Shown piece by piece: positions 870 to 63,653 of a DNA stretch of 64,000 bases. The position numbers and the translations under genes were made by a program. Source of the DNA: Perkinsela sp. CCAP 1560/9. Taxonomy: Eukaryota; Protista; Euglenozoa: Kinetoplastea. How positions within the stretch are numbered: the first letter of the stretch is position 1; every line of letters starts with the position of its first letter. Location: positions 620,001-684,000 of the forward strand of contig CBFFSA010000010.1 of assembly GCA_965644495.1 (NCBI GenBank), in the 5' to 3' direction. The notes below the pieces were generated by a model. That model saw nothing but the letters and a program-made list of their open reading frames with translations. It had not been told where the DNA came from and did no database searches.

Positions 870-1592
870 CTAATCCAAATCATCATGTACATGCATGTCC
901 TCTTCATCTTCATCCTCATCAACGTCCTCATCTTCATACTCATCAACGTCATCTTCATCCACATCAAAGTAGAGCTCTCGAATTCGACATCCGTCCGAGA
1001 CTGTAATGTTTGTTTGCAGAAAGTCGTAATACAAATCAGGGCTGTGCATATCCACATCAAACGCACCTTCGAGTTCGCTGTTGCTCGACAGCTTTAGTTC
1101 CTCCAAAGTTGTCGGAAGTGATGAGAAATCGACGGTGCCATGGAAATGATTTTTTTCGACATCCAAGACCTCCAGTATGGGTGGGAGCTGGAGCAAGTCA
1201 AGATGACCGGTTAACTGATTCGCATACAAATATATTTGCGTTAGGTTCGGAGGAAACACTTCCAAGGGAAGTTCACCGCGAAGATGGCCATGTTGCATGC
1301 GAAAAGAAACTTAACTCTGTGGCAAATATTTCCAAACTAAGAATCCTAGGTTTTCAAAACACCAACTGAATTCTTTAACTTGATTCTTCTCGTCGCATTC
1401 AACGCCTTCCCACTCGCATGCAGGTGTGTCGGTGTTCCAGCTAGGGGGTCTTTCCTGCATATTTTGAATAAGTCTTATTAAATCGTACTCTTGCGGCACG
1501 GTAATAGAGCTCACCTTCGCTGCACAAGGACGACTTATAGATTGTTCCTCAGCTGCACGTAATGCACAGGCTAATGCACAGAACTCAAACAT
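870..1592 (-). pseudogene. LRR-family gene with acidic tail, interrupted by in-frame TAA at 1311-1313
   Basis: ORFs 1311-1826 and 870-1298 are in the same frame. PQEYDL, CEWEGVEC cap and LPxxLxxLxLxxNxFxG repeats are present. The TAA aligns to Leu in the paralog (YLPQS* vs YLPPNL). Confidence 0.85.
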
Positions 1593-1901
1593 TTTTGTCA
1601 GGTGGCAAAAAGAAATCGGAATAAACAAAAGGTGTCTCTGTATGTGGCTATCTAAGTCTTGCAAAAAAAGCCAACTATCAATACTAAAAGAATAGGCTTC
1701 ACCTTTGTACGTACCACATGATACAGTAGCTACACAAGTATACCTCCCGATTGTCGCGTACATTTCATTTCGCGCAAGAGCTTTTCGTTTACCAAAGTCC
1801 GCGTTTTCTTTTTCATGAGGAAACACTACCGATTTTTTTTACAACCTTTATACTAAAAAAAATTATGACTTCTTATTTTTTAGACGCCCTCCCCTTTTTC
1901 T

Positions 1902-4169
1902 TCATCTTTTCTCTCTCCCCTCGGTTTCCTCTTGCAGAAACCGATCCAAGATATTCTTCTGATGGTAGGACTCGTTGGAGAAGCTGGCGCTGATCTGCAG
2001 GAACGTGGCGCGGGCGCTGTCCGGGATCCGCAGCCCCGCCTCCCGGAACACGCTCTCGAGCTCCCGCAGCGCCTTCATCCAGTCCCGGTGGACGTGACGC
2101 GCGAAGGTGGCGCAGAGGTTATGCAGAAACCGCTCGGGGGAGAGAGCAGAGGCCCTCGAAGGGGAAGAAGAGTCCCTTAAAGCGTTCTCCTCAGAGCCCG
2201 GGAAGAGCAAAACATCGGGGAGACCACAGCGCTCGAGTAAGGCACTCGTGGTCACGTCTTTTTTAGGATAGGATCCAGGAGATAGGGAAGGTGAAGATAG
2301 GGAGGAAGAATCTTCTTCTTCCGCTGCTTCTCCTGGGAGGTATTGGTTTCCGATTGTTGTCCCGTCGATGGAATCTAAATTCTCTTCTTCGGGTAAGGTT
2401 TTTGAAGGCGTAACGTTTTGTTTGGAAGAAGAAATCGGAGGATTTTCGTTTTTGTTGGGACTGCTCTCCGTATCCGGCCCTTCCCTTTTTCCTTTTTCTG
2501 TGTTAATTTGTTCGTTTGCTTTTTTTGCCTCCTCGATGACCGCAGGGAGAGCGACACGGGCAATGTGATGGGCAATATCCAACGCCTGGGTGTGTTGCTT
2601 CATTAAAATGGTGGCCGCGAGACTGAGACCGAAACACATCCAATTGGAGGGAAAGATTTGTTGAGGCGAGTTGCTATTCATTACGGCTTCCTCCTCTGTT
2701 GCTGAGCACCCCCGGATTTCGGGTTGAACTTGATTGGAAGCACACAGTAAGGGTCGGATATACTCAAAATAGATATCGTAGGCGGCGTGAAGATTACTAC
2801 ACATTAAATGTGCATGCAACATGGAGCACACAAGGGCAAGACTACGACGGAGAGGAGGGGGGGCGTTTCCTTTGCTTTTATCCTGCTTTTCAAGTTTTCC
2901 TCCTCTTCCTGCGTTTTCTTCCTCATTTATTGCCTCTTTTTCTCCGCCTGCCTCTTCACGCTGTAAAATTTCCGTGAAATCGATCAATGCGGTGGCCTGA
3001 TGCTCCCGGGCCATGGACTGGATTACGCCTTGAATCGCTTGGCGCGAGTTACGAAATTCCGCTCGGGTCTCGACGAGATAGAGTCCCGTCGGCCAGTCCC
3101 CTTGCTCCCTCAGGGCCTGGATGATTTGATGCGGACCAGAGGGGTCCAGCGGGATGTGTTCCCGATCCATTTGTTGGAGTTCCGAAACTGCAGGGTGGAT
3201 ACGTTGGGCTTCACGACGCTCCGCATCGTAACGCTGCTCCACGGTTTGCGAGGCGTTTTCTTGAGCTCGAGCGAGTTCAGTTTCAAATTCTGATTCTACA
3301 TCAGACGCTGTAAATTCATTCGTATTCTCCTCTTTTTTCGGAAGAGAAGAAAAAGTGGTGTCTGTTCTTGAATTCATATTTTCCGTACTTTGAGATGCGC
3401 TACTTTCTGTTGTTTTGTTTCGCGATAGCACCGCATTGACTTTTTCTCGCATCTCTCGGTGTTTCTCCATTCGTCGTACGTTCAGTCGGGTAGGACTCCG
3501 TTCCGGAGCTAATCCTTTTTGGGTAAACTTCGCCACACATAAGGAAGTGCGAATGGAGCTTCGAGTGGCATCAGAGAAGAATGCTTCGGGAAACTGTATA
3601 GCCTCTGGCTCACTTCTGGATAAAGAAGCCGTGCCGTTGACAAAAGAAAGATCCTTCCCGAGATTCTCTACAAAAGAAAGCGCTCCTGCACGAGCGGCTA
3701 GCCGCAGTAACACTACAAAACATTCCAATGAAAGCGGAGTGTTGGGAAAAAAACAATTGGATGGAAGAGTGGAAGGAATCGAAGAAGAGGACGGTGCATT
3801 TGCCTCGCTTCTTCTCAAAGCTGTCCTTACTACCTCCACGGCCTCTCTCCATAAGTTAGGCGGGAGTTTATTCAAAATTCGTGGAATCGAGTCTGGCGGG
3901 GGGCTCTCGCCTGCTTCTCTTAACTCCCGCAGCGCACGGAGTATAGCATCCGGGTTCGTACTTCGCTCCGAGAGCGCGAGAAAGATTTGAGGTTTCGAGC
4001 GAAGCGACGGGGGGAGAACACGAAGCAGCCGGGAAAGATGTGTTGAATGGGAAACATTTCGAATCGCCGCCGCAACCACAGCGGACGTGAGCGTCGTTTC
4101 GGGGGAGGTAAACCTTGTTGAGCATTCACCATTCTCCCCTTTGGGTTGTCCTACATTCTCCTGGTCCAT
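1902..4169 (-). CDS. 5'-truncated copy (755 aa) of the 844-aa helical-repeat protein
   Basis: Nearly identical to 12805-15072. The amplification junction at 4262 removes the native start, and the frame upstream reaches TGA without an ATG. Confidence 0.75.
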   Translation of the reverse strand: MDQENVGQPKGENGECSTRFTSPETTLTSAVVAAAIRNVSHSTHLSRLLRVLPPSLRSKPQIFLALSERSTNPDAILRALRELREAGESPPPDSIPRILNKLPPNLWREAVEVVRTALRRSEANAPSSSSIPSTLPSNCFFPNTPLSLECFVVLLRLAARAGALSFVENLGKDLSFVNGTASLSRSEPEAIQFPEAFFSDATRSSIRTSLCVAKFTQKGLAPERSPTRLNVRRMEKHREMREKVNAVLSRNKTTESSASQSTENMNSRTDTTFSSLPKKEENTNEFTASDVESEFETELARAQENASQTVEQRYDAERREAQRIHPAVSELQQMDREHIPLDPSGPHQIIQALREQGDWPTGLYLVETRAEFRNSRQAIQGVIQSMAREHQATALIDFTEILQREEAGGEKEAINEEENAGRGGKLEKQDKSKGNAPPPLRRSLALVCSMLHAHLMCSNLHAAYDIYFEYIRPLLCASNQVQPEIRGCSATEEEAVMNSNSPQQIFPSNWMCFGLSLAATILMKQHTQALDIAHHIARVALPAVIEEAKKANEQINTEKGKREGPDTESSPNKNENPPISSSKQNVTPSKTLPEEENLDSIDGTTIGNQYLPGEAAEEEDSSSLSSPSLSPGSYPKKDVTTSALLERCGLPDVLLFPGSEENALRDSSSPSRASALSPERFLHNLCATFARHVHRDWMKALRELESVFREAGLRIPDSARATFLQISASFSNESYHQKNILDRFLQEETEGREKR

Positions 4170-4662
4170 ACTTTGCGTATTTTTTTCGCTTTTTTCTACT
4201 CCGGGGCAAAGCGTATCGAGTACATTTACCAGTGCTGTCAGCTCTGTCGTTTTGTTGCTGCCAGGCCAACGCAGCCCCCATGTCGGCCCGAAAGAGCGCT
4301 GTGGAACTGATCAGGGCGGGGGGGGCGAATTTCAGAACAGAAGCATTATATACCCCCCCCTCTCAATTAAAGTAAAACGCATGCCAGATGAATAAAATGA
4401 GTCAAAAATACTTTTTTAAAGCCTGTAACATATGCCCAACGTTTCTTTCAAACGAAACAGAGAAACCAAAAAAAAATTATTTTACCCTATTTTGGTGCAT
4501 TCTCACCCATCTTGACCCAGAATTTCTTTCACATTTTATGCCCATTTTACACTCGTCGAATTAATACGGCCAAACGACAAGCCAAACGACAAGCGAGGCG
4601 GAATTCTGAAAAAAATCATTTTCGAAAGAATCCTCATCATTGCACTCATCATCCTCATCACG

Positions 4663-5286
4663 CTAGACCTCTCGAAATAAACATCCATTCGATACCGTGA
4701 TGTTTGTACGCCGAACGTCGTAGCTCAAATTCGGACTGCACATTCCCACATCGAACGCACCTTTGAGGTCACTGTTCCAAGACAGCGTCAGCTCGGACAA
4801 ACCTGTTGGAAGTAACGAAAAATCTACGATGCCAAAAAACTGATTGCTTTGAACGTCAAAAACCTCCAATGAAGGTGGAAGTCGCAAAAGGACGAGATTA
4901 CCTGTTAACTTATTGTAATACAGATAAATGTATACGAGAGATGGGGGAAACATCTCTAGTGGAAGTTCACCACGAAGATGGGCTTTCATCACCTCTAGAG
5001 ACTCTAAATTTGGCGGCAAATATTTCCAATTTAACGATCCTAAATCTGCAAAACGCCAGCTTATAGCTTTAACTCGTTTCTTCTCACAACATTCAATGCC
5101 ATACCACTCACAGACAGGTGTGTTGGTGTCCCAGGTACGATGCTTTTTATCTGCGCTTTCAACAAGTCTTGCCAAATTGTATTCTTGCGGTACGGAAACA
5201 GACCTTATTTTCGCTGCCCGGGGATGCGTTGAAGAGTGTACATCCGATGCACGTAGCGGACATATCATTAAAAAGGAGTAAGTCAT
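4663..5286 (-). CDS. LRR-family protein (207 aa); in-frame acidic tail follows the TAG
   Basis: PQEYNL, CEWYGIEC and 23-aa LRRs; the frame continues RDEDDECNDEDSFEND after the TAG. Confidence 0.85.
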   Translation of the reverse strand: MTYSFLMICPLRASDVHSSTHPRAAKIRSVSVPQEYNLARLVESADKKHRTWDTNTPVCEWYGIECCEKKRVKAISWRFADLGSLNWKYLPPNLESLEVMKAHLRGELPLEMFPPSLVYIYLYYNKLTGNLVLLRLPPSLEVFDVQSNQFFGIVDFSLLPTGLSELTLSWNSDLKGAFDVGMCSPNLSYDVRRTNITVSNGCLFREV

Positions 5287-6320
5287 TGAACTTTGAAACG
5301 CTGTAAAGAAATTGGAAGAGGTGTTGAATAAATTGCTCGGTCAAGGGAACTACTGTACCTAGTTATCTGCCGCTTTTTTTTGCGCAATTTCTTTTAAGAA
5401 AAATAAAAAAAAGTATTCTGAAAAAAAGCGTGATGAAAAAAAAATCGGTCTGCTTACGAAAGCAAGGGTAAAAATAATAAAACAAAATACTATACCCCCC
5501 CTGCTTATGAGTTCCCCGGTTTTGAGAAAAAGGAACTCTTAAGCATACCAGATGATAACTGGATCCAAAACAAATATCCGCTCAGTGAACGAACCTGTAG
5601 AGCAGGCTGACGTAGAGTAGAAATTTATGACATTTTGTCACATGTAAAAAAAGGCTTCGCAAAATGTGGGTACAAAAGCATTCACCAGAAAAAGGAACTC
5701 ATAAGCGTACCTGAGTAGGGGGAACTTATAAGCAGGGGGGCATAGTACACGAAATTCAAAAACCTACCATCAAGAGGCTTTTTTAAATGGTTCATTCAGC
5801 TGCTACATTCAGCTGTATTCGCGTGTCTCCATAGGTTGCCAAAAAGAATGAAAGCGCAAAAAACGCTTCATGTGATTCCTTGATGATGGTTGGCATTCTT
5901 TAGAGCGCATAAATTACTTGTTCCAAGTTTTTGGTGATAGAGGCGGGAAAAATGTTGAAAACCCCGTGAATACTATACGCGAATACGTAAATACTACTAA
6001 ATACTATACTACATGAATACGTGAATACTAAAATCAAAGATTTTTTAGGTATACATTACTATCGGACCAGGCCTCGGGGGGCCGATCGTATACCGCGGTT
6101 TCTCGGGACGCCACCCGCAGCCCCTCAAATATCAACTTTTAACAGGAAAATTCGGAGAAGTATTAGTATTTTTCTAATCATTTCTCTAACAGTATCATTT
6201 ATCTAACAGTAATCATTTATCTAACAGTAAACAAGGCCCCCGCCCCTCCAATTTACACAGCCAATCAATCGAATACAATTGAACAATCAATCTAATTGCA
6301 CACATCAAGTACGTACAGGA

Positions 6321-7043
6321 CTAATCCAAATCATCATGTACATGCATGTCCTCTTCATCTTCATCCTCATCAACGTCCTCATCTTCATACTCATCAACGT
6401 CATCTTCATCCACATCAAAGTAGAGCTCTCGAATTCGACATCCGTCCGAGACTGTAATGTTTGTTTGCAGAAAGTCGTAATACAAATCAGGGCTGTGCAT
6501 ATCCACATCAAACGCACCTTCGAGTTCGCTGTTGCTCGACAGCTTTAGTTCCTCCAAAGTTGTCGGAAGTGATGAGAAATCGACGGTGCCATGGAAATGA
6601 TTTTTTTCGACATCCAAGACCTCCAGTATGGGTGGGAGCTGGAGCAAGTCAAGATGACCGGTTAACTGATTCGCATACAAATATATTTGCGTTAGGTTCG
6701 GAGGAAACACTTCCAAGGGAAGTTCACCGCGAAGATGGCCATGTTGCATGCGAAAAGAAACTTAACTCTGTGGCAAATATTTCCAAACTAAGAATCCTAG
6801 GTTTTCAAAACACCAACTGAATTCTTTAACTTGATTCTTCTCGTCGCATTCAACGCCTTCCCACTCGCATGCAGGTGTGTCGGTGTTCCAGCTAGGGGGT
6901 CTTTCCTGCATATTTTGAATAAGTCTTATTAAATCGTACTCTTGCGGCACGGTAATAGAGCTCACCTTCGCTGCACAAGGACGACTTATAGATTGTTCCT
7001 CAGCTGCACGTAATGCACAGGCTAATGCACAGAACTCAAACAT
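6321..7043 (-). pseudogene. LRR gene with in-frame TAA (copy 2)
   Basis: Same translated ORFs as 870-1592. Confidence 0.85.
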
Positions 7044-7352
7044 TTTTGTCAGGTGGCAAAAAGAAATCGGAATAAACAAAAGGTGTCTCTGTATGTGGCT
7101 ATCTAAGTCTTGCAAAAAAAGCCAACTATCAATACTAAAAGAATAGGCTTCACCTTTGTACGTACCACATGATACAGTAGCTACACAAGTATACCTCCCG
7201 ATTGTCGCGTACATTTCATTTCGCGCAAGAGCTTTTCGTTTACCAAAGTCCGCGTTTTCTTTTTCATGAGGAAACACTACCGATTTTTTTTACAACCTTT
7301 ATACTAAAAAAAATTATGACTTCTTATTTTTTAGACGCCCTCCCCTTTTTCT

Positions 7353-9620
7353 TCATCTTTTCTCTCTCCCCTCGGTTTCCTCTTGCAGAAACCGATCCAA
7401 GATATTCTTCTGATGGTAGGACTCGTTGGAGAAGCTGGCGCTGATCTGCAGGAACGTGGCGCGGGCGCTGTCCGGGATCCGCAGCCCCGCCTCCCGGAAC
7501 ACGCTCTCGAGCTCCCGCAGCGCCTTCATCCAGTCCCGGTGGACGTGACGCGCGAAGGTGGCGCAGAGGTTATGCAGAAACCGCTCGGGGGAGAGAGCAG
7601 AGGCCCTCGAAGGGGAAGAAGAGTCCCTTAAAGCGTTCTCCTCAGAGCCCGGGAAGAGCAAAACATCGGGGAGACCACAGCGCTCGAGTAAGGCACTCGT
7701 GGTCACGTCTTTTTTAGGATAGGATCCAGGAGATAGGGAAGGTGAAGATAGGGAGGAAGAATCTTCTTCTTCCGCTGCTTCTCCTGGGAGGTATTGGTTT
7801 CCGATTGTTGTCCCGTCGATGGAATCTAAATTCTCTTCTTCGGGTAAGGTTGTTGAGGGCGTAACGTTTTGTTTGGAAGAAGAAATCGGAGGATTTTCGT
7901 TTTTGTTGGGACTGCTCTCCGTATCCGGCCCTTCCCTCTTTCCTTTTTCTGTGTTAATTTGTTCGTTTGCTTTTTTTGCCTCCTCGATGACCGCAGGGAG
8001 AGCGACACGGGCAATGTGATGGGCAATATCCAACGCCTGGGTGTGTTGCTTCATTAAAATGGTGGCCGCGAGACTGAGACCGAAACACATCCAATTGGAG
8101 GGAAAGATTTGTTGAGGCGAGTTGCTATTCATTACGGCTTCCTCCTCTGTTGCTGAGCACCCCCGGATTTCGGGTTGAACTTGATTGGAAGCACACAGTA
8201 AGGGTCGGATATACTCAAAATAGATATCGTAGGCGGCGTGAAGATTACTACACATTAAATGTGCATGCAACATGGAGCACACAAGGGCAAGACTACGACG
8301 GAGAGGAGGGGGGGCGTTTCCTTTGCTTTTATCCTGCTTTTCAAGTTTTCCTCCTCTTCCTGCGTTTTCTTCCTCATTTATTGCCTCTTTTTCTCCGCCT
8401 GCCTCTTCACGCTGTAAAATTTCCGTGAAATCGATCAATGCGGTGGCCTGATGCTCCCGGGCCATGGACTGGATTACGCCTTGAATCGCTTGGCGCGAGT
8501 TACGAAATTCCGCTCGGGTCTCGACGAGATAGAGTCCCGTCGGCCAGTCCCCTTGCTCCCTCAGGGCCTGGATGATTTGATGCGGACCAGAGGGGTCCAG
8601 CGGGATGTGTTCCCGATCCATTTGTTGGAGTTCCGAAACTGCAGGGTGGATACGTTGGGCTTCACGACGCTCCGCATCGTAACGCTGCTCCACGGTTTGC
8701 GAGGCGTTTTCTTGAGCTCGAGCGAGTTCAGTTTCAAATTCTGATTCTACATCAGACGCTGTAAATTCATTCGTATTCTCCTCTTTTTTCGGAAGAGCAG
8801 AAAAAGTGGTGTCTGTTCTTGAATTCATATTTTCCGTACTTTGAGATGCGCTACTTTCTGTTGTTTTGTTTCGCGATAGCACCGCATTGACTTTTTCTCG
8901 CATCTCTCGGTGTTTCTCCATTCGTCGTACGTTCAGTCGGGTAGGACTCCGTTCCGGAGCTAATCCTTTTTGGGTAAACTTCGCCACACATAAGGAAGTG
9001 CGAATGGAGCTTCGAGTGGCATCAGAGAAGAATGCTTCGGGAAACTGTATAGCCTCTGGCTCACTTCTGGATAAAGAAGCCGTGCCGTTGACAAAAGAAA
9101 GATCCTTCCCGAGATTCTCTACAAAAGAAAGCGCTCCTTCACGAGCGGCTAGCCGCAGTAACACTACAAAACATTCCAATGAAAGCGGAGTGTTGGGAAA
9201 AAAACAATTGGATGGAAGAGTGGAAGGAATCGAAGAAGAGGACGGTGCATTTGCATCGCTTCTTCTCAAAGCTGTCCTTACTACCTCCACGGCCTCTCTC
9301 CATAAGTTAGGCGGGAGTTTATTCAAAATTCGTGGAATCGAGTCTGGCGGGGGGCTCTCGCCTGCTTCTCTTAACTCCCGCAGCGCACGGAGTATAGCAT
9401 CCGGGTTCGTACTTCGCTCCGAGAGCGCGAGAAAGATTTGAGGTTTCGAGCGAAGCGACGGGGGGAGAACACGAAGCAGGCGGGAAAGATGTGTTGAATG
9501 GGAAACATTTCGAATCGCCGCCGCAACCACAGCGGACGTGAGCGTCGTTTCGGGGGAGGTAAACCTTGTTGAGCATTCACCATTCTCCCCTTTGGGTTGT
9601 CCTACATTCTCCTGGTCCAT
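7353..9620 (-). CDS. 5'-truncated copy 2 (755 aa) of the helical-repeat protein
   Basis: As 1902-4169, with a few private substitutions. Confidence 0.75.
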   Translation of the reverse strand: MDQENVGQPKGENGECSTRFTSPETTLTSAVVAAAIRNVSHSTHLSRLLRVLPPSLRSKPQIFLALSERSTNPDAILRALRELREAGESPPPDSIPRILNKLPPNLWREAVEVVRTALRRSDANAPSSSSIPSTLPSNCFFPNTPLSLECFVVLLRLAAREGALSFVENLGKDLSFVNGTASLSRSEPEAIQFPEAFFSDATRSSIRTSLCVAKFTQKGLAPERSPTRLNVRRMEKHREMREKVNAVLSRNKTTESSASQSTENMNSRTDTTFSALPKKEENTNEFTASDVESEFETELARAQENASQTVEQRYDAERREAQRIHPAVSELQQMDREHIPLDPSGPHQIIQALREQGDWPTGLYLVETRAEFRNSRQAIQGVIQSMAREHQATALIDFTEILQREEAGGEKEAINEEENAGRGGKLEKQDKSKGNAPPPLRRSLALVCSMLHAHLMCSNLHAAYDIYFEYIRPLLCASNQVQPEIRGCSATEEEAVMNSNSPQQIFPSNWMCFGLSLAATILMKQHTQALDIAHHIARVALPAVIEEAKKANEQINTEKGKREGPDTESSPNKNENPPISSSKQNVTPSTTLPEEENLDSIDGTTIGNQYLPGEAAEEEDSSSLSSPSLSPGSYPKKDVTTSALLERCGLPDVLLFPGSEENALRDSSSPSRASALSPERFLHNLCATFARHVHRDWMKALRELESVFREAGLRIPDSARATFLQISASFSNESYHQKNILDRFLQEETEGREKR

Positions 9621-20657: not shown

Positions 20658-21254
20658 TTAGTCCGTAAAAAATGATTCAGGTATACCCCACCATACGCCT
20701 TTAGGAACAGCTCGTTTAGAAATCGATCCCTTGAGTTCGGGATTATTCCTCATGTCAAAGCCTGAACCGCCTTTTGCAAGCGACGAACGCTGAAGACACG
20801 AAAAGTCCACAAAGCCACTGAAGTGACAGTTTGATATATTTAGAATCCTTAACCCTGGTGGAAGATGTTCGAAATGGAGTTCCCCACTAAAGGCATTTGA
20901 ACTTATCCACAAGTGAGCCAAGCCTCGGGGTAATGAGGAAAAATCGACAGGGCCGCGAAGCTGGTTATTATAGACGCTTAAAGATGTGAGAGACCGCGGT
21001 AAATGTTCCCAATGTAATGTTCCAAGTAGCCCCCGAAAACCCCACGAAACTTCTATAACCTCTCCTTTATCATTGCAGTCCACTCCATCCCACTCGCAAG
21101 CAGGCGTGGTAGTACTCCATGACTCATGTGGATTTTCAACATCACTAATCAACTTTGCGAGTTCATATTCCACAGGAAGAAATGTTCCCCTTACCTTTCC
21201 AATGCGTGAACTTGAAGGGACGGGAACATCCGTCTCTTCAGCTTTAAGGAACAT
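20658..21254 (-). CDS. LRR-family protein (198 aa)
   Basis: SSRIGKVRG...LPVEYEL, CEWDGVDC and LRRs. Confidence 0.9.
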   Translation of the reverse strand: MFLKAEETDVPVPSSSRIGKVRGTFLPVEYELAKLISDVENPHESWSTTTPACEWDGVDCNDKGEVIEVSWGFRGLLGTLHWEHLPRSLTSLSVYNNQLRGPVDFSSLPRGLAHLWISSNAFSGELHFEHLPPGLRILNISNCHFSGFVDFSCLQRSSLAKGGSGFDMRNNPELKGSISKRAVPKGVWWGIPESFFTD

Positions 21255-21764: not shown

Positions 21765-21803
21765 AACCATTAAAGATAAAGATACAGTTTCTGTACCTTG
21801 TTG
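21765..21803 (+). other. 39-nt spliced-leader (mini-exon)-like sequence
   Basis: AACCATTAAAGATAAAGATACAGTTTCTGTACCTTGTTG: 39 nt, AAC start, euglenozoan CAGTTTCTGTAC core, TTG end. Confidence 0.8.
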
Positions 21804-22347
21804 GGACTTTTTCCTTTAGTTTATCTTTTCTTTCCCCGGCAACGGGCATAGTCTTACTGTTCATATGCCCGTTGCCGGCCGGCACTAAGGTCGAAACTGT
21901 CCCTCTTTCTCGGCGAAGTAGGGGACGGGCTTCCACCCCATCACCCCTCCCCGGCTCACTCTTTGAGCGAGTTTACTTCCCTCCCCGGATTTCTTCCTTT
22001 CGCGCCCTTTCCTTCCCGAGGAGACATGCGCCCTGGTGGCCTCCCTTGAAGACCACTGGGAGTGGCTCTGCCTCGTCTTATCGCGAGGCAGCGGTCGGTT
22101 GCAGTGCGCCCCTCCGGCTGCTTAAAGAGGTGGTGAGTTGCCTGGACCACCTCTACCAACTGGGACCGAGTCGGTTCCAGTACGCCCCTCCGGCTGCTTA
22201 AAGAGAGGGCGAGTTGCCTGGATCCCCTCTACCGACAGAGTCCGTGCCGAATGCCCCTTGGTGCGAATCCGTTGTGGACGAATCATGTGCCGATGATATC
22301 GGCCGTCGCATCCAGGGCTGTATCTCTGCGCCAATGAGCGCATGAAC
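21765..22347 (+). mobile_element. SL-headed short structured retroposon, copy A
   Basis: SL, pyrimidine tract, 15-bp hairpin CCGGCAACGGGCATA/TATGCCCGTTGCCGG; shares motifs and the ATGAAC end with 23294-23752. Confidence 0.7.
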
Positions 22348-22591
22348 ATCAAATTTTTGGACCCAAGGGGTATCAAGGGGTCCATACGAAAAAAGGGCAG
22401 CAAAACGCTTCACCAGTGAAACGAGATCTATCCAATGCTGTGAAAATGAGAAAAAATAGATAAAAAAATTCAAAATTCCTCCGGGGGGGATATATCTTGA
22501 AACGACTGTATACCTCGACAACATACCAGGGGGGTATGTTAACCGGGAATGTGGTTTAGAACAGTTATTCCAACCAGGATTCCGGAACAAA

Positions 22592-23056
22592 ACAGGGATT
22601 CATGGAGCAAACGAGGGATCCCGGAACAAACCAGCGGTGCGAGTGCAGTTGGCAGACGGTGGGCCTTACAACCTGCAGGTTGGTGATTCGATTCCCGCTA
22701 TCGACAAAACTCGCAACCTGGCGGCCTCACTACAAAGGGAAAGCGATCAGGAGTACCTTCAAGGCCCACACCCAACCCCGCTCCCCTGGAGGAGCGACCC
22801 GGAACCGCCGAGCTGAACCCAGCTCCAGCGCAGCCGCTAAATTGCGAGTTGCTTACGCAAATGAGGCTTGAGACACGATGCAACGGGGTGGACACCTGTC
22901 CTGGTAGCTACGGTTGGGTAGCCGTGTTCGGACCGCAAGGCGTCGAGTGCCGTCTGGGAAGGGGGTAGCAAAACAATGAAGGTCGGTGACCTGAGACTCT
23001 ACCTTAACGGTTGGCACTGCAGAGCCCTCCGTGTCTTCTTCTTCTTCTTATTCTTC
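22592..23056 (+). mobile_element. tRNA-derived SINE-like retroposon with (TTC)n tail and 12-bp TSD
   Basis: TTCCGGAACAAA at 22580-22591 and 23057-23068; 73-nt tRNA-like head at 22634-22706 (AGTGCAGTTGG A box, CTTACAA loop, TTCGATTCC B box); TTC tail from about 23033 to 23056. Confidence 0.7.
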
Positions 23057-23293
23057 TTCCGGAACAAACCACATCTTATCAAGAATCCACTTTTTAGACA
23101 CTGCGCCTCTCAATTCATATTTGTCCACTATATCAAGGTATGAATCACCAGCTGCTAGAGGCATATGCAAAAGACTTGAGGGGTCAACTAAGCCACTAAA
23201 CTTATTGTCTGATACATCCAGATAAGTCACTATGGGGGGAGCTTTTTCATATCGAATTCTCCGCTAAACAAATTTCTGTCCATTTCATTTCAG

Positions 23294-23752
23294 GTTCATA
23301 CCGGGCGAGCCGGCAGAGCATCTTCCTGTCGTACGACGACCGTTATCAACGGCCATTACAGCGCATTCAACGCCGTTCGTACGCAGGGATTCGGCCTATG
23401 GCCACGCCGCGTGGTCCTCAAGGGAGGTTCTGCAGCGCCTGGGGGGGTGAAGGGGGCACTGGACTTCCACGGCGGGGGGCGTCGTTGAGAGGCTGCAAGA
23501 AGCCTTTCGGCTACGCAGCGTCGTTGAGAGGCTCTCCCCGGCGTCCATCCAGCGGGGGCATTCGGCGCGTCTGACGCGCTTCACGTGAGTGCGAAGCGGC
23601 GGCCCCTCTTCAACGGAAAGATGAGTTTCCGGCCCTAGCACCAGCCGGAAACGGACATACATAAAAGGTTAAGAGTATGCCCGTTTCCGGGAAAAGAAAG
23701 GACGAACTAGGGAAAATGTACCAACAAGGTACAGAAACTATATCTTTATCTT
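23294..23752 (-). mobile_element. SL-headed short structured retroposon, copy B
   Basis: The minus strand begins AAGATAAAGATATAGTTTCTGTACCTTGTTG (SL nt 9-39, one mismatch), then a hairpin homologous to copy A; it interrupts LRR coding sequence. Confidence 0.75.
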
Positions 23753-24564
23753 CCATATATCTTCCATATATCCTGAGGCAATACTGAAAAATCTACTGCA
23801 CCACACAACTCGTTAGCAGAAATATTTAACCATGTGAGAGATCGTGGTAAATGTTCCCAATGCAAAGTTCCCCGTACCCCTCGATTGTTCCGCCTAATGC
23901 TAATGACTTCACCTTCATCATTGCAGTCCACTCCATCCCACTGACATGCAGGTGTGGCAGTACTCTATGACTCATGTGGATTCTTAATATCACAAATAAA
24001 TTTTGCAAGGTCATATTCCTGAGGAAGAAATATATCCCTCACTTTTCCAGCACGCGAAGCTGAAGTCGCAGAATTATCCGCACTGTTGTAAAGTATGAGC
24101 AAAGCAAACATTCGAACCATAGTAACTATGGTTTACATGTTAATTATCCGAAACTATTAGTTTCGGATCACATAAATTTATAGCATAAAAAATATATTAA
24201 AATAAAGTAGAAGCGATGAAAAAGACAAGCTTAAAAGAAATTTTTGACGCGGAATCATATTTCACTCTACAGAATAATGTTCCCTCTACACTATGATCCA
24301 AAGCAATCGCTGAGGATGTTAATAGAAGCTCATCGCCCATTATGTTAGACAACCCAGAACCTTATTAAAATTATAAAATTAATTTACCCTTGTATTTACC
24401 ATTTACACGTATACATGCATACGTAAATAAATAAATACACCCGATTTATAAATACAACCGTTTTTACTATCCCATCTCTTCCTCCTTTCTTTTCCTTCAC
24501 CCATCCCCACCCCCTACAAAGTAGCGAAGGAGGGGTGCACACACTCTCTCTCTCCCTCTCTCTC

Positions 24565-41503: not shown

Positions 41504-42316
41504 TTAAAACCAAAGAACCCTATCATTTCCACATATGTCAGTGCCGCTGATTCGAAATTGCTTTATGGTTGTGGGAAGTTTTGAATCGTTAACATCCCCA
41601 TGAAGCTCGGAATTGTTGTTGAGCCACAACTGCTGCAATCGTGGGGGGAGCCTGTCGAATCGCACTAATCCGGAAAAGTTGTTGTTTTGCAGAAGCAACT
41701 TTAACATATTTGGAGGTAAGTGATCCAAATCAAGGGGACCTGAAAAATTATTTTCCGACAAATTTAAAAATTGGAGCGCTTGCGGTAAACGCAAAAACTC
41801 TATCCTTCCTGAAAGCATGTTTTGCCAAAGTGATAATTTCACCAAAGTCATAGGTAGACGATCTAAATCGACCGATCCAACAAACTCGTTTTCCCCCAAA
41901 AATAGCTCGATGAGCATGGAAGGCAAACTTTGCAGATCTAGACTTCCCGTAAACGCATTGTTAGGTAAATGTAAATGTGTTAGTGAGGGTGGTAATCCAT
42001 CCAGATGTACCGAGCCTTCAAGTTTATTCGTCCACACGCTAAAGGAAATTAACGTCCGAGGTAATGAATCCCAATTGAAAGACCCGGATAGATTCGAATA
42101 CGACCATCTGATATGGGTCACGTGAACGCCGTCTTCGCAGGTCATATCCTTCCATTCACATGCAGGTGTCGAACTATTCCATGTTGCATCCAGTTGTTTG
42201 ACGTGAGCAACAAATCGCATAAGTTCATATTCCTGCGGCAATTCAGCTCCACGGACCCTACCAATTCGACATTGGGAGCCTGAATCAGTTTCTGCTAAAT
42301 ACACCGCAAACATCAT
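41504..42316 (-). CDS. LRR-family protein, about 270 aa
   Basis: RIGRVRGAELPQEYEL, CEWKDMTC and about seven 23-aa LRRs; start chosen by homology with paralogs. Confidence 0.92.
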   Translation of the reverse strand: MMFAVYLAETDSGSQCRIGRVRGAELPQEYELMRFVAHVKQLDATWNSSTPACEWKDMTCEDGVHVTHIRWSYSNLSGSFNWDSLPRTLISFSVWTNKLEGSVHLDGLPPSLTHLHLPNNAFTGSLDLQSLPSMLIELFLGENEFVGSVDLDRLPMTLVKLSLWQNMLSGRIEFLRLPQALQFLNLSENNFSGPLDLDHLPPNMLKLLLQNNNFSGLVRFDRLPPRLQQLWLNNNSELHGDVNDSKLPTTIKQFRISGTDICGNDRVLWF

Positions 42317-43035
42317 AATACTCTTATGCAGGAAAAAAGAATGTGTTTCGATTTCTAATTTTGTGGTGCTTTGTAAACCGCTCCGCATCAAAAAGGCACC
42401 CACCCTATCTTCACATAAAAAGCTATTCAAATACTCTTTTTCAAACAACCCGAACGTTTTCACAGAAAAGTGTCTTTCACAAATGGACACTGTGCAAGTT
42501 TACCCTCTCTGTGGATGTCACAGGATGGCATGGCGAGTCTATTGTTAGGAATCTTCATCCTCCTAAGCAGATCCTTAGAAAACAAAATATAGAATATGGG
42601 ATGAAGCTATTGAATTGGTGTTTGTAAATTGATTCTACTGAGTGTGAATGGCTTCTGCGTTTATAAGCGCGTTTTAAATTGTAATTTTAAAAATAAGTGT
42701 AGTAGGTTTCATTTCTCCAAAATATTGACATGGCTGAAAGCGTTCGGGCTGGAGGTGACGTTATCCCTGCTCTGTTCTGCGTTCACTGTGAAAAAGTTAT
42801 ACCGTTCACACTATGTTCTCCACGACGGTGCTTGCGAAACACTGAAGCAGAGTAGCACTGAATGAAGTGTGGAAGTAGAGCAATGTGCCAACTGCGATTA
42901 TGCAAACGTGCCGATTCTGGCCAAAAAATGTCCTCGCTTCTCCTCGTCGAAAAACCTCGAAGAATTGTCACGATCACAGAAAAAAAAAATTGTTTCCTGT
43001 GGGATGGAGCCAAGGCGCAACGCGTATGTTGCTTC

Positions 43036-57164: not shown

Positions 57165-58016
57165 TTAAAGTTTGACAAACTTTGGATGAAAACAGGATTG
57201 CACATCCAAAGAATATTTATTTCTGCTCAAATCCAAAGTACGCATTGATGAAGGCAATGTATCAAACCATATTTTGCCCGCAAATGCGTTACTCCCAAGA
57301 GACAGCGCACGCATTGAATGCGGAAGCTTGCGAAACTCCAACTCACCATCAAGTTTATTGTCGGATATGTATAAAATTTCAAGTTGTTTCGGAAGACATG
57401 TCAAATCCACGCTCCCTACGAATTGATTCCCTTGAAGATAGAGCTTGCGTAGCCCTCCCGGCAACAACGTCAAATCCAACGTTCCTGAAAAACAGTTACT
57501 GGGCAAAGAAAACACTTTCAACGAAGAAGGGAGTGACGTGAGATCAAGCACACCGGAAAACTTTGTATTTGATGACCAAAGCTCTTCAAAAACATGAGGT
57601 AAGGAGCCGGCTTCAAAGGATCCATGAAACGGGTTGTATTGGAGGTTTAAATATGTGAGTTTAGGGGGAAGTGCAGAAACCGGAACAGTTCCACTAAGTT
57701 CATTATCTCCTACGCGAACATTGCACACAGTGTGGGGTAGGCTACCCCAGCTAAGGTTACCCTTCAGCGCTTTGGCCGACCAATCGATGCCAGAAACTTC
57801 ATGGTCGGAAGTACATGTGACACCGGTCCATAAGCATGCCTCTGTTTTATTGCTGGTAATTACTGACTTCTTCTCCAGATTCTCAATAAATTGAGCCATT
57901 TGTATGTCTTGTGAGAGAATGGCTCCGCGCACTTTACCCAGACGGGTTCGAGTATGGGTTGAATCTGCAAGTGCAGCTCTTCGGATGCTTAGAGATTGAT
58001 GTTTAGACATTGACAT
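57165..58016 (-). CDS. LRR-family protein, about 283 aa
   Basis: RLGKVRGAILSQD, CLWTGVTC and LRRs; the upstream ORF extension overlaps a dispersed repeat. Confidence 0.92.
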   Translation of the reverse strand: MSMSKHQSLSIRRAALADSTHTRTRLGKVRGAILSQDIQMAQFIENLEKKSVITSNKTEACLWTGVTCTSDHEVSGIDWSAKALKGNLSWGSLPHTVCNVRVGDNELSGTVPVSALPPKLTYLNLQYNPFHGSFEAGSLPHVFEELWSSNTKFSGVLDLTSLPSSLKVFSLPSNCFSGTLDLTLLPGGLRKLYLQGNQFVGSVDLTCLPKQLEILYISDNKLDGELEFRKLPHSMRALSLGSNAFAGKIWFDTLPSSMRTLDLSRNKYSLDVQSCFHPKFVKL

Positions 58017-58233
58017 GAAATAAATAAGATCATTTGAACGTGCGGTATAATGTACATCTGTGATAGATACAGGGGGTGGCACGAAAATAATGGGGTCTAA
58101 ATTTTCTATTTTGGTCGTAAAACTTAACCAAATCCATACATGGTTAATAATAGCGCATTGAAGAGCTCTCACAGAGTTATGGGTCACCTCAACATGCATT
58201 TACCCTCCATTCCTCCATCCGCACCACACTTTT

Positions 58234-62261: not shown

Positions 62262-62292
62262 TTCCGTACCTTGTTGTTTCTGTACCTTGTTG
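62262..62292 (+). other. Tandem spliced-leader relics
   Basis: TTCCGTACCTTGTTG then TTTCTGTACCTTGTTG, followed by ACTTTTTCC as in copy A. Confidence 0.75.
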
Positions 62293-63653
62293 ACTTTTTC
62301 CAGGTAAAAAAATTTTGATGCCTCAGTCGGCGCAGGAATCGCCTTGCAGAAAATGTCCGCGCAGTCACTTTCCTGTAGCACTCGCATAGAATCCTATGAA
62401 TCGCCTGCAAAGGTCAGTACTAAAAACTCAACTTTGCGAGAAATTATTATTATCGCGAGAGTAGCATCCTGTTTTTATCGTTAATGGTACGCGGCGTCGT
62501 AAGGACTCGCCGACTTCGGCACTAAGAACTTCGCATGGAAATTTTGGGCGAGAAGCCATGGAGCGGCTTGTGGGGGGGTATGGGAAGACGACACGACCAC
62601 GGAGTATCCATTCCCACATAAAGATCTTGAATATTTTCGTGTAAGCATTGTTGCGGTGTTCTCCAGGAAGAGAACGTAGGAAACATGATACAGAGTCTAG
62701 AAGGCGGACGGCCGCTGCCTCTAGTGTCTGATAGTCTCACTCCCTAGATGGGGGAAGGGCACAGTATGCAGTAAAAGATACTGCAAAGGAAAAGCGTAAG
62801 TGGTTACATTCCATGGTCGCACGAGCCCACGATAAAATTACTACTACTATGAATGTACAGGACCAATTCGCAAAATTAGGTTACTTGAACCCTGCACTTG
62901 CCCAGTTCCACTCTCCAGAGCTATAAATTCCTACAGTCCGCGTGCATCAGCACAAGATTATGATTTCCCAGCAGTTTCAACGCGGCGCACAGTCGGGAAA
63001 TAGAACCCGAAACAAAGCGTCAAGAAAGCAGCACACAAGTAGTGATCAAGCGGAAAGATGAAACTGAAGTCTAAGATCCAAGAAGCAAGTTGAAAAGAAA
63101 CATAAAGTTAAACGATAAGATGAACGGTATAAACCACCAACGAGTAAGTGACCCCCATTTTTTTCGTACAGGGGGTGTAGGGGGTGTTTTGTAATGCAGA
63201 GATATTTGTACCTCCAGAGATATTTAGGCCCAGCAGTAGTAGGCGCAATGAGTTGTTTGCTGGAATCGAGGACTGGGCTTTGTTTCACGAGTCGTCCGAC
63301 GATACTTATTCCGATACTGGAATCAGCAACAGCGAGGCAAAGCGCCTTGTTTCACTCCGTCGATCAGCGAATGCATGGAACAAGCGTGTTCGCACTACAG
63401 ATGACGGTATGCAGTCTCGAGAAGATGTTGATCTTCTTACCAAGCGAGCAGCTGTTGAAGCAGCGTCATGCATGTTGTCGACCTCGACTTCATCCAACAA
63501 TACCGCGAAACCCATCATTATTAGAGGAAGCTCATTATCTCGAATGGAATTTCGGCCTGAATAGCTCGACACAAATTTGTCTACTTCGTTAACGCATCTT
63601 ACGGCATTGTGCTTTCGCAAATTGATGCAGTTGAAAGATTATTCTCCTTGGGA

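What the first reader, a model, noticed from the sequence alone, without database searches (positions are those of the whole stretch)
21765..23752. Spliced-leader-headed, RNA-structured mobile element family
Seen: two diverged non-coding insertions, 21765-22347 (+) and 23294-23752 (-), begin with the same SL-like sequence. Copy A has a full 39-mer (AACC...CAGTTTCTGTACCTTGTTG) and copy B has nt 9-39. Each continues with a pyrimidine tract containing an AG, a long hairpin with a compensatory change (CCGGcAACGGGCATA/TATGCCCGTTgCCGG vs CCGGaAACGGGCATAC/GTATGTCCGTTtCCGG), a small second hairpin with an RCTARG loop, shared CCTCCCTTGA.GACCAC and GCCGAATGCCCC blocks, and an ATGAAC end. Copy B interrupts LRR coding sequence, so it is an insertion. 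Established: kinetoplastid mRNAs receive a roughly 39-nt SL with the CAGTTTCTGTAC core by trans-splicing, and SL sequence normally lies in SL-RNA gene arrays. Inference: a non-autonomous retroposon that needs no promoter because trans-splicing cuts it out of polycistronic RNA and caps it before reverse transcription. Alternative: a CRE/SLACS-like derivative carrying its SL target duplication, since copy B starts near SL nt 11.
Basis: partly seen in the sequence, partly recalled or inferred. Interest (0 to 1): 0.92.

Follow-up and report, generated by a model that had tools for sequence, protein, structure and literature searches.

The report
Spliced-leader-headed SINE retroposon family
The two inserts are old copies of a short non-coding jumping element whose DNA begins with the cell's own spliced-leader tag. 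This shows that it spreads as leader-carrying RNA that R2-like retrotransposons copy back into DNA, which I found unreported for kinetoplastids, although it is common in this genome.

Summary
Both inserts belong to a dispersed, structured, non-coding retroposon superfamily. It has at least 86 copies with an intact head and subfamilies A1, A2/C, B, D, E and F.

- **Head.** Each copy starts inside the genuine 38-nt spliced leader (SL), mostly at nt 10-13. It runs to the exact exon end and continues with G(T/G)AC, a pyrimidine tract with AG, and a 15-bp hairpin.
- **Tail.** Each copy ends in a TCTCT-stem-loop-ATGA motif plus a short A run. SL-headed, 4.7-4.9 kb R2-like (RT plus C-terminal endonuclease) LINEs carry the same tail, and its stem covaries strongly.
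- **Not SL genes.** The body is not the SL-RNA intron.
- **Not a target duplication.** The SL part shows no fixed difference between subfamilies, while the adjacent sequence differs by 11-34%. Re-spliced variants exist: SL joined after the internal AG, and a double-SL head.

So the non-autonomous retroposon reading is supported. One step is not: no AG acceptor precedes GTAC anywhere in the assembly (0 against 86). The source of the leader-carrying RNA is therefore open. It could be unassembled master loci, or masters driven by SL-gene promoters.

Many copies sit at one register of LRR genes. Other windows of this genome gave the same phenomenon earlier in this scan.

The parts
21775..22353 (+). 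Copy A, an old copy of the A-type SINE-like element (92% identical to the family majority sequence). A possible further SL remnant lies at 21765-21774.
21775..21803 (+). SL relic of copy A (SL nt 10-38). It ends exactly at the exon boundary and is followed by GGAC, where most copies have GTAC.
21808..21819 (+). Pyrimidine tract ending in AG. In other copies this AG serves as an alternative trans-splice acceptor (SL joined directly to TTCATC).
21836..21878 (+). 5' hairpin of copy A: 15-bp stem (arms 21836-21850 and 21864-21878) with a 13-nt loop.
22094..22244 (+). Internal tandem duplication of about 75 nt in the A body (85% identity between the two units).
22323..22353 (+). 3' module of copy A: TCTCT, stem 22327-22331 / 22338-22342, loop CAATGA, then TGAAC ATCAAA.
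23283..23750 (-). Copy B, a B-type member with about 8 near-full relatives in the genome, inserted in an LRR gene.
23722..23750 (-). SL relic of copy B (SL nt 10-38, with one C-to-T change at nt 20), followed by GTAC at 23718-23721.
23645..23690 (-). 5' hairpin of copy B: 16-bp stem including one G-U pair. It carries the A-U version of the covarying pair.
23283..23318 (-). 3' module of copy B: CTCT, stem TGCCGG / CCGGTA (one G-U pair), loop CTCGC, then TGAAC CTGAAATGAAA.
23752..23964 (-). Upstream piece of the interrupted LRR-family gene: an N-terminal cap-like C.W.GV.C motif plus the first repeat.
23051..23263 (-). Downstream piece of the same LRR-family gene. An uninterrupted paralogue lies at 20676-21116.

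Best explanation
Copies A and B are dead copies of a SINE-like, non-coding retroposon superfamily.

**Shown**
- The family is dispersed and has common ends.
- Its head is the genuine spliced leader.
- Its tail is a covarying stem-loop also found on R2-like LINEs.

**Inferred mechanism**
- The template is an RNA that carries a genuine spliced leader at its 5' end.
- It ends in a small stem-loop (TCTCT-stem-loop-ATGA) that SL-headed LINEs of this genome also carry. These LINEs are R2-like, with RT plus a C-terminal restriction-like endonuclease.
- The LINE protein recognises that tail in trans. It nicks a target, often one register of LRR-gene repeats, and reverse-transcribes the RNA.
- It usually loses the first 9-12 leader bases at the 5' junction.

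**Copies can be used again**
- Some were trans-spliced at the element's own pyrimidine-AG, or at the AG inside the leader relic, and then copied once more.

**Open**
- Most copies appear to come from a few source loci. Their nature is unresolved.
For: **A dispersed family**
- At least 35 full A copies lie in the fetched loci. Most are 97-99% identical to the majority sequence.
- 86 intact heads span the subfamilies.

**The leader is genuine**
- It equals the SL RNA gene exon and stops at its last base.
- The SL intron and the element differ after GTA. Only 32 nt are shared.
- Some copies carry SL from nt 1, 3 or 6.
- Between subfamily majority sequences, the SL part shows 0 of 24 differences. 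The next ~95 columns show 10-35.

**Re-spliced forms**
- SL is joined after the internal AG in L058, L060 and L075b.
- A double-SL head precedes GTAC at C1:4017998-4018047.

**Link to the LINEs**
- The 3' stem-loop is shared with LINEs. 98.8% of cells pair, 4 of 5 pairs change on both sides, and 0 of 500 shuffles reach the covariation score.
- The LINE ORFs (1571-1612 aa) align to solved R2 proteins from RT through the C-terminal endonuclease region.
- A LINE (L075) sits in the same LRR gene family as the SINE copies.

**Non-coding and structured**
- There is no long ORF.
- Fold z-scores are -4.9 for copy A and -6.2 for copy B.
Against: - No source locus with an AG acceptor in front of GTAC exists in the assembly, for any subfamily. 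Yet the A1 subfamily is young.
- The same holds for a tested LINE family: 9 of 9 heads are preceded by the SL end.
- The junction variant lacking one G recurs in several subfamilies. Precise splicing does not predict this.
- There is no clear target-site duplication: 4 of 35 against 2.3 expected.
- No RNA data were available.
- The exact LINE partner was not identified. Only tail-motif similarity links SINE and LINE.
Confidence: 0.72

Rival explanations
1. The source copies sit inside SL RNA genes, as CRE/SLACS elements do, and are transcribed from the SL gene promoter. The head would then be the SL exon plus the first three intron bases (GTA). No trans-splicing would be needed, and gene conversion within the SL array would keep the SL part identical to the real leader.
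For: - GTA after the leader equals the start of the SL intron, GTATGAG.
- There is no AG|GTAC acceptor in the assembly.
- The SL part is invariant between subfamilies.
- The LINEs are R2-like, and CRE/SLACS elements of that kind live in SL genes.
- Only two promoter-linked SL genes are assembled, so an array may be missing.
- Heads start near nt 10-13, close to the nt 11/12 site recalled from memory for CRE/SLACS.
Against: - No promoter-linked SL followed by GTAC was found.
- The LINE families have the leader joined to unrelated 5' UTRs without GTA, ending exactly at the exon boundary. That fits splicing.
- Subfamilies with GGAC or TAC at the junction have propagated.
- Re-spliced variants prove that trans-splicing acts on these RNAs.
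Confidence: 0.15
2. The SL relic is inherited as DNA. It is healed at each cycle when the reverse transcriptase switches template, by homology, from the relic onto abundant SL-carrying RNA.
For: - No AG master exists, for the SINE or for a tested LINE family.
- The junction sequence is constant and the one-base junction variant recurs.
- R2 enzymes are known to jump between templates (general knowledge).
Against: - A switch within 28 nt would rarely occur, and 5' flank transduction should then be common. It is not seen.
- The bases next to the junction would not be refreshed, yet they too are invariant.
Confidence: 0.06
3. The two inserts are orphan SL RNA genes or SL RNA pseudogenes (exon, intron and spacer).
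For: The leader is followed by GT(A) in copy B, and hairpins follow it.
Against: - The real SL RNA gene has a different intron after GTA and ends about 70 nt later in a T run.
- Only the leader is shared.
- The elements are 470-580 nt long, end in a LINE-type tail and lack SL nt 1-9.
Confidence: 0.02
4. The leader sequence is the landing site or a target-site duplication of an SL-specific element, not part of the mobile unit.
For: Some copies directly follow another element's tail (L046, L073, L075).
Against: Most copies have unique DNA, often LRR coding sequence, directly upstream of the relic. Nothing SL-like lies downstream.
Confidence: 0.03

Closest known systems
Dinoflagellate retrogenes with DNA-encoded spliced-leader relics (PMC5585692, PMC6050394, PMC12014239)
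   Same: A leader relic at the 5' end marks retroposition of trans-spliced RNA. Stacked relics record repeated cycles.
   Different: There the relics head cellular protein-coding genes. Here they head a non-coding SINE-like family and its LINEs, in a kinetoplastid-type genome, with a defined structured 3' tail.
CRE-clade elements SLACS, CZAR, CRE1 and CRE2 of trypanosomatids (PMC12278014)
   Same: The domain plan of RT plus a restriction-like endonuclease, and an association with spliced-leader sequence.
   Different: Those elements insert at one fixed position of SL RNA genes and end in poly(A). Here the copies are dispersed, often in LRR genes. The leader is part of the element's 5' end, and the tail is a stem-loop plus a short A run. 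Clade membership of the LINEs was not established (one search gave no named relatives).
LINE/SINE pairs that share a 3' tail, and R2 recognition of its own 3' UTR structure (PMC3747384)
   Same: A short non-coding element carries the LINE's 3' recognition structure and is presumably copied in trans.
   Different: There is no polymerase III gene-derived head (tRNA, 7SL or 5S). The head is a spliced leader plus a conserved hairpin module.
RIME/ingi, NARTc/L1Tc and SIDER of trypanosomatids (PMC8190864)
   Same: Non-autonomous partners of LINEs in kinetoplastid genomes, with a conserved 5' module.
   Different: Those belong to the ingi clade with an AP-type endonuclease and share the Pr77 internal promoter. 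No leader relic is reported for them.

Membership tests
SINE (non-autonomous non-LTR retroposon) | Short, non-coding, dispersed multicopy family with common ends | tested here: met
   At least 86 intact heads. At least 35 full A copies, 97-99% identical to the majority sequence. Longest ATG ORF is 75-88 aa.
SINE (non-autonomous non-LTR retroposon) | 3' end shared with an autonomous LINE of the same genome | tested here: met
   The TCTCT-stem-loop-ATGA motif is found on LINEs and SINEs, and the stem covaries. The exact partner family was not pinned down.
SINE (non-autonomous non-LTR retroposon) | Head derived from a polymerase III gene with an internal promoter | tested here: not met
   No tRNA and no Rfam hit in either element. 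The head is the spliced leader.
SINE (non-autonomous non-LTR retroposon) | Target-site duplications | tested here: not met
   4 of 35 copies have 4 or more matching bases, against 2.3 +/- 1.5 in permuted flanks. Copy B has at most a 5-nt candidate.
CRE/SLACS-type SL-gene-specific LINE derivative | Insertion at a fixed position inside SL RNA genes | tested here: not met
   The flanks are LRR genes, microsatellite or other elements. SL-intron junctions occur at only 8 loci, none carrying the element.
CRE/SLACS-type SL-gene-specific LINE derivative | Partner LINE with RT followed by a restriction-like endonuclease region | tested here: met
   The L075 ORF, residues 863-1597, aligns to R2 chains 9nl3 and 9dou through their C-terminal part. 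No AP endonuclease domain was found.
CRE/SLACS-type SL-gene-specific LINE derivative | RT phylogenetically within the CRE clade | tested here: inconclusive
   No named CRE/SLACS protein is among the 91 relatives. Distant hits carry R2-like Myb or zinc-finger N-termini.
SL RNA gene or pseudogene | Exon followed by the SL intron and terminator | tested here: not met
   The intron of the real gene differs after GTA. Only the leader is shared.
Retrocopy of trans-spliced RNA (leader-relic class) | Relic identical to the SL exon and ending at its last base | tested here: met
Retrocopy of trans-spliced RNA (leader-relic class) | A source locus with an AG acceptor at the junction | tested here: not met
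   0 AG-preceded heads against 86 SL-preceded heads. 40 of 40 A2/C heads are SL-preceded.
Retrocopy of trans-spliced RNA (leader-relic class) | Leader-carrying transcripts of the element | not testable with these tools
   Only contig-level runs were served, and none is on record as RNA.

The most novel reading that the evidence does not exclude
The leader head may be an active, continually renewed part of the element's life cycle, not a passive scar. Under this reading the young family has no conventional splice-acceptor master. Its sources would be elements fused behind SL RNA gene promoters in an unassembled SL array. That would make it the first SINE whose head and transcription unit derive from a spliced-leader RNA gene. 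The conserved hairpin module would protect or process that RNA.
Probability: 0.18. Interest if true: 0.85.

Novelty: new variant of a known kind. Interest (0 to 1): 0.68.

Why it matters
- **A molecular tag.** Kinetoplastid genes are transcribed in long polycistrons and matured by trans-splicing. Here that machinery leaves a tag on mobile DNA, so every retroposition event can be recognised and sometimes counted as cycles, through double leaders. This was previously exploited only for dinoflagellate retrogenes.
- **A new kind of SINE.** A SINE can exist without a polymerase III head. It borrows a capped leader at one end and an R2-type tail at the other.
- **A different lifestyle for these LINEs.** Restriction-endonuclease LINEs live strictly inside SL genes in trypanosomatids. 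Here they have a dispersed, LRR-gene-preferring lifestyle.
- **A concrete open question.** The missing acceptor asks how the retroposed RNA is made.

Tried and rejected
**Searches that found nothing**
- Rfam, at gathering and at E<=1, and ARAGORN found nothing in either element or for the SL gene model. No known ribozyme, tRNA or SL model explains the head.
- The search for a splice-acceptor master failed: AG before GTAC in four pattern designs gave nothing.
- The search for promoter-linked SL followed by GTAC failed.
- Literature searches for the leader sequence itself, and for leader-headed retroelements in kinetoplastids, found nothing relevant.
- The homologue search gave no named kinetoplastid relatives of the LINE.

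**Tests with weak or negative results**
- The target-site duplication test was negative.
- The target base composition shows only a pyrimidine after the A run.
- Pfam on the two flanks of copy B was weak: LRRNT_2 at E=0.2. The LRR assignment rests on paralogy.

**Limits of the data**
- Public runs are contig-level only and none is RNA. Laying them showed junction-spanning DNA contigs but no transcripts. One 785-nt 'skip' in a single contig had only 26 letters on one side, and I do not trust it as an empty site.
Contexts of several interesting places (C8:577320, C19:15568, C24:48209, C1:4017998) were read only from pattern output.

**Readings considered and dropped**
- A 17-nt cis-intron (GTAC..AG) as the origin of the short-head variants. 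It is too short, and trans-splicing gives the same product.
- Template jump onto the free SL exon. The junction is too constant.

Full report
**What is there**

The window is G000:C10:620001-684000 of a 21-Mb, 110-contig assembly. Both inserts exist as described.

The organism's real leader can be read from two tandem SL RNA genes (C1:661xxx, locus L072). A 38-nt exon, AACTTTAACGATAAAGATACAGTTTCTGTACCTTGTTG, is followed by GTATGAGAAGC. Two stem-loops and a T run follow, and a 5S rRNA gene lies beside them.

- **Copy A** matches the leader securely from nt 10 (21775) to the last exon base (21803). The ten bases before it resemble nt 1-9 only imperfectly.
- **Copy B** (minus strand) matches from nt 10 (23750) to the exon end (23722).
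- **After the leader,** both continue with G(G/T)AC, a pyrimidine tract ending in AG, and a 15-16 bp hairpin.
- **Corrected 3' ends.** Comparison with other copies moves these to 22353 (A) and about 23283 (B).

**It is a family**

- The leader 20-mer occurs 605 times in the genome, against 0 for the reversed control.
- Copy A's body has dozens of full-length relatives.
- A degenerate head pattern (leader end, GTAC, pyrimidine tract, TAG) finds 86 copies.
- In the fetched loci I found 40 distinct heads. They fall into subfamilies A1, A2/C, B, D, E and F.
- The subfamilies share the first ~130-170 nt, while the bodies diverge until unalignable.
- Most A1 copies are 97-99% identical to their majority sequence, so the family was active recently. 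The window's copy A is 92% identical and therefore older.
- Neither element has an ORF longer than 88 codons.
- Both fold much better than shuffled controls, with z = -4.9 and -6.2.

**Not SL genes, not a target duplication**

- The SL RNA intron differs from the element right after GTA. BLAST finds only the 32-nt leader in common.
- Upstream flanks are unique DNA.
- The 5' start lies at leader nt 10-13 in 27 of 35 copies, with a range of 6-15.
- Pattern output shows further members starting at nt 1, 3 or 7. The templates therefore carried a complete leader.
- Between subfamily majority sequences, the leader part shows 0 of 24 differences. The next ~95 columns differ at 10-35 positions. The leader is either renewed at each cycle or strongly constrained.

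**Trans-splicing does act on these RNAs**

- In L058, L060 and L075b the leader is joined directly to the base after the internal pyrimidine-AG.
- At C1:4017998-4018047 a D-type head reads: leader end, then leader nt 23-38 again, then GTAC. This is the product expected if a resident copy was spliced at the AG inside its own relic and copied again.
- Eleven such double leaders exist genome-wide. One lies in this window at 62263-62293.

**The tail and the likely driver**

- All members end in TCTCT, a 4-6 bp stem, a 4-8 nt loop, the closing stem, ATGA(A/T), and a short A-rich run.
- The same motif ends SL-headed LINEs of 4.7-4.9 kb.
- On 16 tails of different families, 98.8% of cells pair and 4 of 5 pairs change on both sides. 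No shuffle in 500 reaches the covariation score, and slid controls collapse.
- The LINE ORFs (1571-1612 aa) have a central RT and no AP endonuclease. They align to solved R2 proteins through the C-terminal endonuclease region.
- RT genes are extremely abundant: 1072 candidate loci.
- Named CRE/SLACS relatives were not retrieved, so clade membership stays open.

**The 5' hairpin**

RNAalifold recovers the 15-bp stem. One column switches C-G to A-U in 9 of 36 heads, and a few pairs are G-U. That is probably one or two events, so it is only modest evidence. What argues for function is that the head module is kept while the bodies are replaced.

**Targets**

- There is no consistent target duplication.
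- About 13 of 35 A copies, copy B and a LINE (L075) lie in the same orientation within one LRR gene family.
- Seven A copies sit exactly in front of an L..N.L.G repeat motif. Several more are one or two bases off.
- Copy B splits a gene whose uninterrupted paralogue lies at 20676-21116.

**The unexplained step**

If ordinary copies were spliced out of polycistrons at the SL|GTAC junction, a source with AG before GTAC should exist.

- None does, for any subfamily.
- A tested LINE family behaves the same way: 9 of 9 heads are preceded by the SL end.
- A junction lacking one G recurs in several subfamilies.
- Only two promoter-linked SL genes are assembled. Masters hidden in an unassembled SL array, driven by the SL promoter, therefore remain a live rival.

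**Literature**

I found leader relics described for dinoflagellate retrogenes, and CRE-clade elements described as SL-gene-specific. I found nothing on leader-headed LINE/SINE families in kinetoplastids.

**Relation to earlier notes of this scan**

Other windows of this genome yielded the same phenomenon. My independent tests agree with those notes on the leader head, the R2-like LINEs, the covarying tail and the LRR preference.

**Verdict**

This is a real, recently active, leader-headed SINE-like family. It is a new variant of known kinds, with one unresolved mechanistic step.

Noticed in passing
window 62263-62293 (+): Another retro-insert begins with a truncated leader (nt 28-38) followed by leader nt 23-38 again. 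This double relic implies two rounds of trans-splicing and reverse transcription. Eleven such loci exist genome-wide.
   Followed up: partly
window about 22580-23068 (+): A high-copy repeat lies between copies A and B, with a tRNA-like stretch and a (TTC)n run at 23036-23060. ARAGORN and Rfam do not call it.
   Followed up: no
L072 (G000:C1:660000-663000): Only two SL RNA genes (297-bp period) share the promoter-proximal sequence. A 5S rRNA gene (L072:2044-2162) and tRNA-like sequences lie beside them. An inverted SINE-A fragment sits just downstream.
   Followed up: partly
G000:C2:801573, C25:23938, C8:75339, C19:15568, C24:48209 (pattern output): In retrocopies the first two leader bases vary (AG, AT or TT instead of AA). 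Some loci look like retrocopies of unspliced SL RNA. This could reflect misreading of modified cap-proximal bases by the reverse transcriptase.
   Followed up: no
L071 (G000:C1:2476500-2483500), 1130-1210 and 6222-6300: A 5,092-bp tandem repeat carries a tiny insert: leader nt 2-38 plus 14 nt, flanked by a 20-bp direct repeat.
   Followed up: no
L073:1248-1330, L075:1592-1650, L030 and L025 heads: The LINE 5' UTRs after the leader contain a TACTAAC-like motif, a pyrimidine run and an AG just before the start codon. This is a built-in splice-acceptor-like region.
   Followed up: no
L075 (G000:C10:466000-474500) 1583-7560: A head-to-tail stack inside an LRR gene: an SL-headed LINE, then an A2-type SINE directly after its tail, then a short-head B-type SINE.
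   Followed up: partly
L074 (G000:C1:3063500-3071500) 1400-6800: A LINE and an A-type SINE are each embedded in the same (GT)n microsatellite. Microsatellite targeting is known for some restriction-endonuclease LINEs.
   Followed up: no
window 1-64000, minus strand: The window is largely an array of paralogous LRR-family genes (for example 41504-42490 and 57165-58199). The gene interrupted by copy B also has two in-frame stops, so it is probably a pseudogene.
   Followed up: partly
whole genome: The first look found 1072 reverse-transcriptase candidate loci in 21 Mb. Many have open frames of 1000-2800 aa. This is an unusually heavy retroelement load for a genome of this size.
   Followed up: no
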